Below the pieces are notes generated by a model. The model saw only the letters and a program-made list of their open reading frames with translations. It ran no database searches and was not told the DNA's origin. From NCBI GenBank assembly GCA_021613535.1, contig CP075492.1:11656001-11720000 (forward strand): DNA of 64,000 nucleotides. The letters are read 5' to 3'. Every line of letters starts with the position of its first letter. The stretch's first letter is position 1. This stretch comes from Adineta vaga (taxonomy: Eukaryota; Animalia; Rotifera). Shown piece by piece: positions 53,042 through 56,000 of the stretch. Position numbers and translations under genes: made by a program.

Positions 53042-56000
53042 ATGGCAGCAGCAGCCTCATCGGCTGGCGCTGCCATTTCATCAATGATAACATTGATGAG
53101 AAAACAAAGTTTCCGTAACGATTTTGGACCATTAATGGATTACAATCAGGAAGATACGACGGGTGGTAATTTAGAATGGATGAATCGGCCATTTATTAAG
53201 AATATTTATCGTTTAACTGGTCTACTTAGTTTTATTTCAACATGTATGAATACACCGAAAACATTTGAATATCATCCATTTCTTCAATATACAACATTTA
53301 TTATTGATATTACATGTGCCATTATTTTAACCATTGAAGCAGTTGTTAAAATGAAAACTCGAGGTTTATTAACAGGTGATTCAGCATATTTACGCGATCG
53401 ATGGAATCATTTCGATGCCATTATGGTTTTAAATATTTACTTTTCAATTATTCTACAAGTAAGACAAGAAAAACAAGAAAATGAAATCTTTTTCATTTAG
53501 TTAATTTATTTTGTTCTATAGACATTGGAATTAACACATATGATTCGTACCTATTCATATTTTACAATTATCCGTTCTCCACGACCTTTCATTCTTGTCA
53601 AAGTGTTAAAAACATTTCTAAAATTTGAATTACCCAATAATCAAATTAAATCAATTCTTCAGTAAATTTTTCTAAAGCATTTACTAATATCATTTCACAC
53701 ATTTGAACTTTTCTTTTACAGGCGTTCAAGTTCGCAAATTTATAATGTCACAATGTTTTTCCTTTTCTTTATGAGTTTATATGCCATATTAGGTGTACAA
53801 TTTTTCGGATCACTTACATTCCATTGTGTTCGAAATGATACGGATTTAAAGTAAGAAAAAAAAAGTATATGATTTTTCTCTCTTAAAATAATTCTTGATA
53901 TTTAGTAATGTAACAAAAAAAGATCTAATGATACCGGATACATATTGTTCACCAAATAAAGATGGCTTTCATTGTCCGGAATATTTTATATGTAAAAAAA
54001 TTGATATTCAACGAAATCTTCGTGGTTATAATGGTTTTGATGAATTAGCTACGAGCTTTTTTTCTGTCTATGAATCAGCTAGTCAGGAAGGATGGGTCTT
54101 CTTAATGTATCGAGCAATCGATAGTCTCCCATCATGGCGTGCTTTTTTTTATTTCATTACATTAATTTTCTTTTTGGCATGGCTTGTAAAAGTAAGTTTC
54201 AAATGATCGATGATCTTTTGTTATTTCAAGTTGAAAGGAAAACAAAATGAAATTGAGCTCGAAGAAAGAATAAAGTAAATTCTTTTGTTAGGAAATCTTA
54301 TCGATTAGCTTTTATCAGTAAGAAAAAGCTTTCAATTCTGTTACAACGATTGAATTACCTTTGATCTTGGAAATGTATGATCAAGGAAAGGAAATCAAGT
54401 TCGGATAAGAAATAATAACATTAATGTTACATTCTTGCATGTTCAAAGAATTGTTTTGATTTTGATCGATCACTCTCGACCGGATATGAATAATTAGAAA
54501 CATGATATGTCTTTGTTATTGTTTAGAATGTATTTATTGCCGTTATTATTGAAACATTTGCTGAAATTCGTGTTCAATTTCAACAAATGTGGGGTGCAAG
54601 AGGAGCACCATCAGACATTGAATCAACAAAAGTAGATGAAATTTTTTCGTGTATATGCATAGAAATCAAATCTTCGTTGTTAATTGTATCTATAGGTACT
54701 ACAAAAAGCAGATGATAGTACATTAAAATTAGTTAATATTGATGAAAATAAAAAGAAAGGTGTCGCACCAGCTGTTTGTTTAAAAATTGTTCAATCACCT
54801 GTATTTACTACTATCGTTATGGTTGTTGTTCTTGCCAATACAATATTTACTGCAACAATTAAACATACACATAATAGAACAGTTGATGAACGAAATCGTG
54901 AAATTTATCATAAAATTGAAGTAGAATACGAATCTTTTGTTTTCTTGATTATTTCAAATATAGAGAATTTTGTTTTTAGACATTATTTACATTATTCTTT
55001 GATCTAGAAGCATTATTTAAAATCTTTTCCTTGGGATTTAAGAATTATATTCGACGATCTATATTTAAATTTGAATTTATGCTTGCTGTTGGAACAACTC
55101 TTCATTGTTTTCCACCGCTTTATCGAAGTGCATTTACATATTTTCAAGTTTTACGTGTCGCTCGATTATTAAAATCAAGTCCTTTACTTGAAGATTTTTT
55201 AAATAAGGTATAGAAAATAGATTTTCTATCCGACATTTCAACATAATTCATAAATTTAGATCTTTGGTCCAGGCAAAAAACTTGGTAGTTTAATTCTTTT
55301 TACAATGTGTTTACTCTTGATCACATCTTCCATTAGTATGCAATTATTTTGTTTTATCAAAGGTTTAAAACAATTCGAAACATTTCCTCGAGTAAGTCGA
55401 TTCATTGATGTTGTAACTTCAATAAACATGATTTCCTCAGGCGTATATGTCTATGTTTCGTATTGCGATGAATGATGGATGGACAGAAGTGATGTATTCC
55501 GTCATGGATCAAGTCTATGAATTCGGAATCTTCTTTCTCTGTCTAACGGCACTTTTCTTTATCTTTTTTCATTTATTAACGAATTCTGTAAGTCGATTGA
55601 AGTGATATATGAGAGCACGCGCATGAACATGAATGAATGAATGAAAGAAAAATTATGCTTTGTTTTTGATTTTCTTTGAATGATTTCTCTAGGCATTTAT
55701 ATCCATGTTTCAAGTTTTAACACAAAAAGGATGGGTTGATGTGATGCATTATACTATGTTGCATAGTATTCAAGATGTAGCTCCATTTGTTGCGATTTAT
55801 TTTATTGTTTATCATCTTGCCATTAATTTGGTATGAATAAACGATCATGTCGAGTTACATATCTGTTGTTTGCATGTATTATATATGTGTATTGCTTATT
55901 GTCATGTGTAAAAGGAAGAGACTTGGGATTTGATTTATACCTTTCTTGGTCTCTTTCAATTAGATTGTGCTTTCACTTTTCGTTGCCGTTATTTTGGACA

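What the first reader, a model, noticed from the sequence alone, without database searches (positions are those of the whole stretch)
55441..55830. NALCN carries two tandem alternative domain-II pore exons: a splice switch between EDEE and EKEE selectivity filters
Seen: between the exon ending ...FETFPR (55391) and the exon starting [13 protein letters not shown] (55964) lie two homologous phase 0-0 exons, each encoding the full DII pore helix, filter and S6 start. Exon a has Asp at the filter position (GAT 55474-55476) and exon b has Lys (AAA 55726-55728). The other filters are E (SQEGW), E (SLEGW) and E (TGEDW), so the products would be EDEE (Ca-channel-like, all acidic) or EKEE (Na-channel-like); vertebrate NALCN is EEKE. 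Established: mutually exclusive exons 15a/15b giving EEEE versus EKEE are known in invertebrate NALCN such as Lymnaea (Senatore et al. 2013). Inference: the switch is retained in this lineage. Neither exon appears in the ORF track.
Basis: partly seen in the sequence, partly recalled or inferred. Interest (0 to 1): 0.85.

Follow-up and report, generated by a model that had tools for sequence, protein, structure and literature searches.

The report
Rotifer NALCN has two alternative pore exons
The sodium-leak channel gene NALCN of the bdelloid rotifer Adineta vaga carries two interchangeable, long-conserved exons for one quarter of its pore (one with an acidic Asp, one with a basic Lys); this extends a splice switch already known in snails and sea stars to rotifers, and here RNA shows only the acidic version being used.

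Summary
Exon a (55441-55587, filter Asp) and exon b (55693-55830, filter Lys) are real, in-phase, homologous exons. Both align to residues 543-585 of solved NALCN, with Asp/Lys on Glu554.

Spliced RNA contigs from three runs of this organism and one run of a close relative join the upstream exon to a, and a directly to the downstream exon, skipping b. No a-b joint and no contig of this locus's exon b was seen. So exon a is used and the exons are not co-included, but use of b at this locus is unproven.

Both exons, with all splice sites, are kept in six other bdelloid genomic loci and in Rotaria and A. steineri gene models (dN/dS about 0.01-0.13). Monogonont loci have the same tandem pair but with Glu in a. 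Exon trees place b among 15b (Lys) exons and a with monogonont and gastropod 15a exons (moderate support).

The ohnolog on contig C6 has recently lost exon a, leaving a recognisable relic, and makes only the Lys form.

GCAUG (Rbfox-type) words flank exon b in 7/7 bdelloid loci, and Rbfox-like genes exist in the genome.

Verdict: a new member, with an Asp variant, of the 15a/15b switch of Senatore 2013. The only earlier scan note is on this same stretch, not on other DNA.

The parts
53042..60183 (+). NALCN-like gene (C3 ohnolog), approximate extent from the first to the last coding ORF; filters ASQEGW (DI), AMNDGW or LTQKGW (DII), LSLEGW (DIII), VTGEDW (DIV)
   Evidence: ORFs. Spliced RNA contigs. 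80-99% identity of single exons to bdelloid NALCN models. The exons were never joined into one model.
55260..55391 (+). Constitutive upstream exon (DII S5 end, ...FETFPR)
   Evidence: RNA joints 55205(+2)>55258(+2) and 55391>55441; 91-98% aa identity in six other loci.
55392..55440 (+). 49-nt intron upstream of exon a; contains the conserved word GATGTTGT (55407-55414); no GCATG
   Evidence: Joint 55391>55441, GT..AG, in runs X1 and X4.
55441..55587 (+). Exon a: DII pore helix, filter Asp (GAT 55474-55476), S6 start; the acidic 15a-type exon
   Evidence: RNA joints 55391>55441 and 55587>55964, with one 725-nt contig spanning up|a|down. Conserved in six loci and in Rotaria/A. steineri models. 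Aligns to NALCN residues 543-585.
55588..55692 (+). 105-nt intron between a and b; GCATG at 55621-55625 (candidate Rbfox-type element)
   Evidence: GCATG is present (1-2 copies) in this intron in 7/7 bdelloid loci, against 4-12% expected per locus by shuffling.
55693..55830 (+). Exon b: DII pore helix, filter Lys (AAA 55726-55728), S6 start; the 15b-type exon
   Evidence: 96-98% aa identity in seven other loci, pN 0-0.07 against pS 0.2-0.9. Aligns to NALCN residues 543-585, E 3e-13. No RNA contig of this locus covers it.
55831..55963 (+). 133-nt intron downstream of b; TGCATG at 55871-55876 (candidate Rbfox-type element)
   Evidence: TGCATG lies 5-42 nt downstream of exon b in 7/7 bdelloid loci and is absent from the same intron of the C6 ohnolog.
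55964..56038 (+). Constitutive downstream exon (DII S6, [25 protein letters not shown])
   Evidence: RNA joints 55587>55964 (X2, X4, X5) and 56036(+2)>56098(+2).

Best explanation
The window holds one of the two ohnologous NALCN genes of Adineta vaga. Its domain-II pore segment is encoded twice, by two tandem exons that are used one at a time. Exon a places Asp at the filter position equivalent to human Glu554 (E-D-E-E). Exon b places Lys there (E-K-E-E).

The pair is the rotifer version of the invertebrate 15a/15b pair. Monogonont rotifers keep Glu/Lys, and the bdelloid line changed Glu to Asp and remodelled exon a.

At this locus the form seen in whole-animal RNA is exon a with b skipped. 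Exon b is kept by selection and is most likely used in a minority of cells or conditions (inferred). The sister copy on C6 recently lost exon a and can only make the Lys form, so the animal expresses both pore types, partly from different genes.

The choice is probably set by trans-acting splicing factors. GCAUG words of the Rbfox type are conserved on both sides of exon b, and the genome encodes Rbfox-like proteins (inferred).

The expected functional effect is a change in how divalent cations bind, block or pass at the filter (inferred from the human E554A mutant, not measured here).
For: Anatomy and frames.

Gene identity: each exon aligns to NALCN 543-585 in solved structures. Neighbouring exons are 80-99% identical to bdelloid NALCN models.

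RNA:
- Eight GT..AG introns are removed, so the runs hold RNA.
- Joint 55391>55441 appears in X1 and X4.
- Joint 55587>55964 appears in X2, X4 and X5 (a second organism, about 95% identical).
- X4 record 13 spans up|a|down in one contig.
- No a>b or up>b joint was seen.

Selection: six other loci (GC 27-51%) keep both exons and all AG/GT sites. Exon a has pN 0.03-0.17 against pS 0.4-0.98. Exon b has pN 0-0.07 against pS 0.2-0.9.

Orthology: monogonont loci L019 and L020 have a(Glu)+b(Lys). In the exon tree, a groups with monogonont and gastropod 15a at 81/82, and the rotifer b exons group at 92/73 inside the Lys exons.

Ohnolog: on C6, exon a has lost about 70 bp including the acceptor and filter, has a TAA, and its donor GTAAGT has become ATAAGC. 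A C6-type transcript carrying exon b is seen in X2. The annotated C6 protein P0141 reads E-K-E-E. Its nearest model, A. steineri P0139, still has exon a.

Regulation: GCATG is present in both introns flanking b in 7/7 loci. Counts are 18 in 1,233 nt against 18 in 22,774 nt elsewhere. None occurs in seven other RNA-supported introns. Rbfox-like RRM exons lie on C1 and C4.

Function: human E554A nearly abolishes divalent block (PMC7182417).
Against: - No RNA contig shows exon b of this locus in any of four runs, so a true switch here is not demonstrated. Contig depth is only about 2-7, and contigs drop minor forms.
- The runs are labelled RNA only by the tool's guess. The label rests on the spliced joints.
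- The exon trees use 46 columns. Exon a sits on a long branch and the program warns of long branches meeting. Before the monogonont rows were added, AU tests rejected neither 'a with Glu exons' (p 0.10) nor 'rotifer a with rotifer b' (p 0.17).
- GCAUG conservation is a motif match without any binding data. Monogonont loci lack it near the exons.
- Both exons are multiples of three, so nothing in the frame enforces exclusivity.
- Ion selectivity of either form has never been measured for any invertebrate NALCN (PMC3557258).
Confidence: 0.7

Rival explanations
1. Complete partition between ohnologs. In A. vaga the C3 gene now makes only the Asp pore and the C6 gene only the Lys pore. Exon b in the window is no longer spliced in and is merely too young a relic to show decay.
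For: No contig of this locus's exon b appears in four RNA runs, while exon a is found in all of them. C6 has lost exon a and expresses b. The loss on C6 looks recent, so decay of a now-redundant exon b would not yet be visible.
Against: The window's exon b has intact AG/GT sites, no A. vaga-specific amino-acid change, and both conserved flanking GCATG words. All other bdelloid loci of both ohnolog types keep both exons. Low-depth contigs cannot show absence.
Confidence: 0.2
2. Independent origin. The rotifer a/b pair arose by a separate exon duplication within rotifers and only resembles the 15a/15b pair of molluscs and echinoderms by convergence.
For: The first exon tree left the placement of exon a unresolved, and the AU test did not reject 'rotifer a + rotifer b as one clade' (p 0.17). 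Exon a is very derived (E 1e-4 to NALCN against 3e-13 for b).
Against: The order is the same (acidic exon upstream, Lys exon downstream), the boundaries are the same, and the phase is the same as in eight non-rotifer species. With monogonont rows added, a groups with 15a exons (81/82) and b groups within Lys exons. Shared words support this: GWTE.M and ALFF-type S6 in a-type exons, AIYFI in b-type exons.
Confidence: 0.08
3. Both exons are constitutively co-included, as several public Rotaria and A. steineri gene models show, giving a channel with a duplicated domain-II P-loop.
For: Models P0022, P0027, P0054, P0138, P0139 and P0140 carry a and b in tandem, and the frame stays open.
Against: RNA joins a directly to the downstream exon in four runs, with no a>b joint. 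Other public models of the same genera carry a only, b only or neither, so the models reflect gene-finder choices. A duplicated pore helix does not fit the 4x6TM fold (established knowledge).
Confidence: 0.02

Closest known systems
Mutually exclusive exons 15a/15b of invertebrate NALCN (Lymnaea stagnalis and other molluscs, annelids, planarians, echinoderms, hemichordates; Senatore et al. 2013, PMC3557258)
   Same: The gene, the segment (DII pore helix to proximal S6), the exon boundaries and the phase are the same. So is the order: the acidic exon first, the Lys exon second. The Lys exon is the more conserved and groups with other Lys exons.
   Different: The phylum Rotifera was not sampled in that work; 'rotifer' has 0 occurrences in the paper. 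The bdelloid acidic exon has Asp rather than Glu and a strongly remodelled P-loop (RIAMNDGW). The gene is duplicated, and one copy has lost the acidic exon. Use of the Lys exon at this locus is not yet shown.
Single-exon E-D-E-E NALCN of sponges and placozoans (Senatore et al. 2013; Stephens et al. 2015, PMC4436565)
   Same: The filter formula E-D-E-E is the same as in the exon-a isoform.
   Different: Those genes have one exon 15 and no Lys alternative. The bdelloid Asp is derived from a Glu still present in monogononts, so it is not a retained ancestral state.
Secondary loss of exon 15a in Schistosoma and Helobdella (Senatore et al. 2013)
   Same: The acidic exon is lost, leaving a Lys-only (E-K-E-E) gene, as in the C6 ohnolog.
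   Different: Here the loss affects only one of two ohnologs, and a recognisable relic remains. The other copy keeps both exons, so the organism retains the acidic pore.
Rbfox/ASD-1/FOX-1 control of alternative and mutually exclusive exons through intronic (U)GCAUG (own knowledge: C. elegans egl-15 exons 5A/5B, vertebrate CaV1.2 and NaV exons)
   Same: Conserved (U)GCAUG words lie within about 5-55 nt of the regulated exons in otherwise unalignable introns. Rbfox-like RRM genes are present in the genome.
   Different: There is no binding or perturbation evidence. Elements lie both upstream and downstream of exon b, so the direction of the effect cannot be read from position alone.

Membership tests
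NALCN (four-domain sodium-leak channel) | Four-domain (4x6TM) channel whose best matches are NALCN rather than CaV or NaV channels | tested here: met
   Exons a and b each hit solved NALCN chains best, at residues 543-585. Single exons of the window are 80-99% identical to bdelloid models that match named NALCN proteins at about 2000 bits.
NALCN (four-domain sodium-leak channel) | Filter ring of the E-(E/K/D)-(E/K)-E type, read from the four P-loops | tested here: met
   ASQEGW, AMNDGW or LTQKGW, LSLEGW and VTGEDW in the window's ORFs. The same motifs occur in P0022, P0141, P0151 and Lymnaea P0226.
NALCN exon 15a/15b alternative pore system | Two tandem homologous exons spanning the DII pore helix to proximal S6, with the same phase and conserved boundaries | tested here: met
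   The layout is the same as in Antedon, Anneissia, Asterias, Tegillarca, Elysia, Biomphalaria, Plakobranchus and Lineus.
NALCN exon 15a/15b alternative pore system | The upstream exon carries Glu and the downstream exon carries Lys at the filter | tested here: not met
   The downstream exon has Lys, as required. The upstream exon has Asp in all 10 bdelloid sequences, not Glu. Monogononts have Glu. The residue is acidic, so this is a variant of the feature.
NALCN exon 15a/15b alternative pore system | Mutually exclusive use in transcripts (each exon found without the other) | tested here: inconclusive
   Transcripts with a and without b are shown in four runs, and no a>b joint was seen. No transcript with b and without a is shown from this locus. 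The only exon-b transcript comes from the C6 ohnolog, which has no exon a.
NALCN exon 15a/15b alternative pore system | The Lys exon belongs to the common 15b lineage and the acidic exon to the 15a lineage | tested here: inconclusive
   Rotifer b exons lie within the Lys exons (92/73), and a groups with monogonont and gastropod 15a (81/82). However, only 46 columns were used, there is a long-branch warning, and the earlier AU tests were non-rejecting.
NALCN exon 15a/15b alternative pore system | The two isoforms differ in ion permeation | not testable with these tools
   Never measured for any invertebrate NALCN (PMC3557258). Human E554A alters divalent block (PMC7182417).
Rbfox-regulated alternative exon | Conserved (U)GCAUG in the flanking introns close to the exon | tested here: met
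   7/7 bdelloid loci in both introns, an 18-fold enrichment, and none in seven neighbouring introns.
Rbfox-regulated alternative exon | An Rbfox protein is encoded by the organism | tested here: met
   RRM exons on C1 and C4 read KRLHVSNIPFRFRDEDL and GFGFVTF...GRKIEV. Their best solved matches are RBFOX2 and RBFOX1, E 1e-11. A search with Pfam Fox-1_C found nothing, and it also found nothing in the control genomes, so it is uninformative.
Rbfox-regulated alternative exon | Binding of Rbfox to the elements, and a change in exon choice when either is removed | not testable with these tools
   Needs CLIP, minigenes or knock-down.

The most novel reading that the evidence does not exclude
In A. 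vaga an ancient mutually exclusive pore-exon switch is caught part-way through being resolved into two genes. After the bdelloid genome duplication both copies kept the Asp/Lys exon pair for a long time. One copy (C6) has now lost the acidic exon and its downstream UGCAUG element. The other copy (C3, this window) has become mainly or wholly the acidic-pore gene. This would be a natural experiment in which splice-level and gene-level control of pore chemistry can be compared between closely related bdelloid species.
Probability: 0.35. Interest if true: 0.55.

Novelty: new member of a known kind. Interest (0 to 1): 0.45.

Why it matters
NALCN sets resting excitability in neurons. What the acidic and Lys pore variants of invertebrate NALCN actually do has been open since 2013, because no invertebrate channel had been expressed functionally.

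This locus contributes four things:
- It extends the switch to Rotifera, both monogononts and bdelloids.
- It adds a natural Glu-to-Asp variant at the position whose human equivalent (E554) governs divalent block.
- It gives RNA evidence that the acidic form is the prevailing product of one gene, while a sister gene is Lys-only.
- It provides a conserved cis-element that makes the control of exon choice testable.

It also shows that public bdelloid NALCN gene models are wrong or inconsistent at this point: both exons, one exon or neither. That matters for anyone using those proteins in channel phylogenies.

Tried and rejected
- Exon a as a chance ORF or decaying pseudo-exon: rejected. It is spliced into RNA and conserved, with low dN/dS, in at least six other loci.
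- Co-inclusion of both exons, as in several public models: rejected by the a>downstream joints.
- Steric hindrance as the cause of exclusivity: unlikely. The a-b intron is 73-105 nt, while ordinary introns of this gene are 48-62 nt.
- Policing by frame-shift and NMD: excluded, because all four exons are multiples of three.
- 'Exon b has unusually weak splice sites': dropped. TAG acceptors and non-consensus donors are common among the RNA-supported introns of this gene.
- First exon tree and AU tests: uninformative on the origin of exon a.
- Pfam Fox-1_C search of the genome: no hit, but also none in the controls, so uninformative.
- Fetching the Brachionus calyciflorus gene by exact protein: not on record. 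One monogonont contig had no DNA available.
- Competing RNA structures between the three introns: not tested.
- A joined (spliced) protein model of the window's gene was deliberately not built or searched. All searches used single exons by reference or proteins returned by the tools.

Full report
**What is in the sequence**

The window is G000:C3:11656001-11720000 of a 100.8-Mb, six-contig, 30% GC assembly. The assembly is Adineta vaga. The ohnolog's annotated protein P0141 is named 'I4U23_028443 [Adineta vaga]' and sits on a contig of 13,893,210 bp, the length of C6.

A NALCN-like gene runs on the + strand from about 53042 to 60183.
- The upstream exon ends ...FETFPR at 55391.
- Exon a is 55441-55587 (49 aa, cag|GCG...TCT|gtaagt), with Asp (GAT 55474-55476) in AMNDGW.
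- Exon b is 55693-55830 (46 aa, tag|GCA...TTG|gtatga), with Lys (AAA 55726-55728) in LTQKGW.
- The downstream exon starts at 55964.

All four exons are multiples of three. The other three P-loops read ASQEGW, LSLEGW and VTGEDW. Both exons align to residues 543-585 of solved mammalian NALCN, with position 12 on Glu554. Exon b matches strongly (E 3e-13) and exon a weakly (E 1e-4), so exon a is a very derived sequence.

**RNA**

One run search and one read-laying were allowed.

Four runs flagged 'RNA?' held 32-43% of the sampled words of the stretch intron + exon a + intron. That is about the share expected if only the exon is present.

Laid on 54700-56900, the runs' contigs lack eight GT..AG introns, so they are cDNA. 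The key joints are:
- 55391>55441 in X1 and X4.
- 55587>55964 in X2, X4 and X5.
- X4 record 13 (725 nt) runs upstream exon | a | downstream exon | two further exons without a break.

X5 is a different organism, about 95% identical, and shows the same a>downstream joint. No a>b or upstream>b joint was found, and depth over 55588-55735 is zero in all four runs.

The only contig touching exon b (X2 record 7) has 8 mismatches in 74 letters. It continues into letters that match the C6 ohnolog exactly, so it is the C6 transcript. Contig depth is only about 2-7, and contigs drop minor forms. Absence of exon b from this locus's RNA is therefore not shown.

**The ohnolog**

C6:3837214-3837846 carries the same gene. 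Its exon b is intact, with 2 conservative amino-acid differences. Its exon a is a relic:
- About 70 bp are deleted, including the acceptor, pore helix and filter.
- There is an in-frame TAA.
- The donor has changed from GTAAGT to ATAAGC.

Its annotated protein reads E-K-E-E.

**Conservation**

Searching exon a alone against 1.84 billion representative proteins gave only six close hits (81-89% identity). All are ORF fragments on genomic contigs. Their six contigs (L013-L018; GC 27-51%) each hold upstream exon | a (49 aa, NDGW) | b (46 aa, QKGW) | downstream exon (where the contig reaches it), with AG and GT at every boundary.

Nei-Gojobori counts:
- Exon a: pN 0.03-0.17 against pS 0.4-0.98.
- Exon b: pN 0-0.07 against pS 0.2-0.9.

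Both exons are therefore under purifying selection.

NCBI models of Rotaria and A. steineri also contain these exons, but inconsistently: both in tandem, a only, b only or neither.

Brachionus calyciflorus has an a-type exon with Glu (ITNEGWTETMY). Two monogonont-like loci (L019, L020) carry a(Glu) followed by b(Lys).

**Relationship to 15a/15b**

Senatore et al. 2013 described tandem exons 15a (Glu) and 15b (Lys) in flatworms, molluscs, annelids, echinoderms and hemichordates. Rotifers were not sampled. No paper in the library links NALCN pores with rotifers.

An exon tree without monogononts left exon a on a long, unplaced branch. AU tests rejected neither alternative. With monogonont rows added, the results were:
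- Bdelloid a(Asp) groups with monogonont a(Glu) and gastropod 15a(Glu) at 81/82.
- All rotifer b exons group at 92/73 inside the Lys exons.
- The program gives a long-branch warning.

Order, boundaries and phase are identical to the eight non-rotifer tandem pairs recovered here. I read this as probable orthology, with Glu changed to Asp in the bdelloid stem.

**Timing of the loss on C6**

In single-exon trees, the nearest relatives of A. vaga C6 are A. steineri P0139 and R. sordida P0027, and both still have exon a. The relic also keeps 87% identity over 53 nt. Together these point to a recent loss in the A. vaga line. These are quick trees on single exons, so this is provisional.

**How the choice may be made**

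- Frame policing is impossible, because all exon lengths are multiples of three.
- The a-b intron (73-105 nt) is longer than ordinary introns here (48-62 nt), so steric exclusion is unlikely.
- GCATG is present in the a-b intron (1-2 copies, often GCATGAGCATG) in 7/7 bdelloid loci.
- GCATG is also present as TGCATGT 5-42 nt downstream of exon b in 7/7 bdelloid loci.
- Per-locus chance by shuffling is 3-12% for each of these introns.
- The motif count is 18 in 1,233 nt against 18 in 22,774 nt elsewhere in the loci.
- None occurs in the intron upstream of exon a or in the other six RNA-supported introns nearby.
- The C6 copy, where b is constitutive, lacks the downstream element.

UGCAUG is the Rbfox binding word (own knowledge). 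The genome holds two Rbfox-like genes whose RRM exons hit RBFOX1/2 best. Control by Rbfox is an inference, at about 40%.

**Function**

In human NALCN, E554A nearly abolishes divalent block, and the channel conducts monovalent but not divalent cations (PMC7182417). Asp versus Lys at this position should therefore change divalent binding, block or permeation. 'Ca-channel-like versus Na-channel-like' remains an analogy that has never been confirmed by expression (PMC3557258).

Every search used single exons by reference or proteins returned by tools. Trees that place the window used one exon at a time.

**Verdict**

This is a real, conserved, expressed pair of alternative pore exons. It is a new member (with an Asp variant) of a published kind, with an ohnolog-specific loss and a candidate regulatory element as the new points. 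Interest is moderate.

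Noticed in passing
window 55407-55414; L014, L015, L016, L017 (intron upstream of exon a); L011 (C6) intron downstream of exon b: A short word, GATGTTGT or AATGTTGT, is kept in the roughly 50-nt intron upstream of exon a in five of seven bdelloid loci. 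It also occurs in the C6 ohnolog's intron downstream of exon b. Its role is unknown (branch-point region or protein binding site?).
   Followed up: no
G000:C1:3912894-3912923 (-) = L021; G000:C4:9958894-9958923 (-) = L022: A pair of Rbfox-like genes (ohnologs). The RRM exons read KRLHVSNIPFRFRDEDLKAMFE and GFGFVTF...GRKIEV. The best solved-structure matches are RBFOX2 and RBFOX1 (E 1e-11).
   Followed up: partly
P0022, P0027, P0054, P0138-P0140 (both exons); P0135, P0137, P0141, P0148 (b only); P0142, P0146, P0147 (a only); P0143, P0149 (neither): Public bdelloid NALCN gene models treat the two pore exons in four different ways. Models with both exons encode a duplicated P-loop and are almost certainly annotation errors.
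   Followed up: yes
P0237 (ORF fragment, NCBI-sourced, monogonont-like a-type exon): It reads VMGDSW at the filter. This is a second, apparently independent Asp at the DII position outside bdelloids.
   Followed up: no
window 56321, 56342, 56363 and joint 56398>56479: RNA contigs of X1 and X2 differ from the window at three sites (G>A, C>T, A>T). One X1 contig gives a non-canonical TA..AA 'joint' with 18 foreign letters. This is probably a second haplotype or a cross-laid ohnolog contig, not editing or a real intron.
   Followed up: no
L015 (ERZ26165376) and L018 (SRR10663368): Two bdelloid-type NALCN loci have about 51% GC, against 27-37% in the others, yet have the same exon pair. The organisms are not identified.
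   Followed up: no
window 62110-64000: An earlier scan note (s1-502266) proposes a six-gene trans-spliced operon starting just downstream of this gene. It was not examined here.
   Followed up: no
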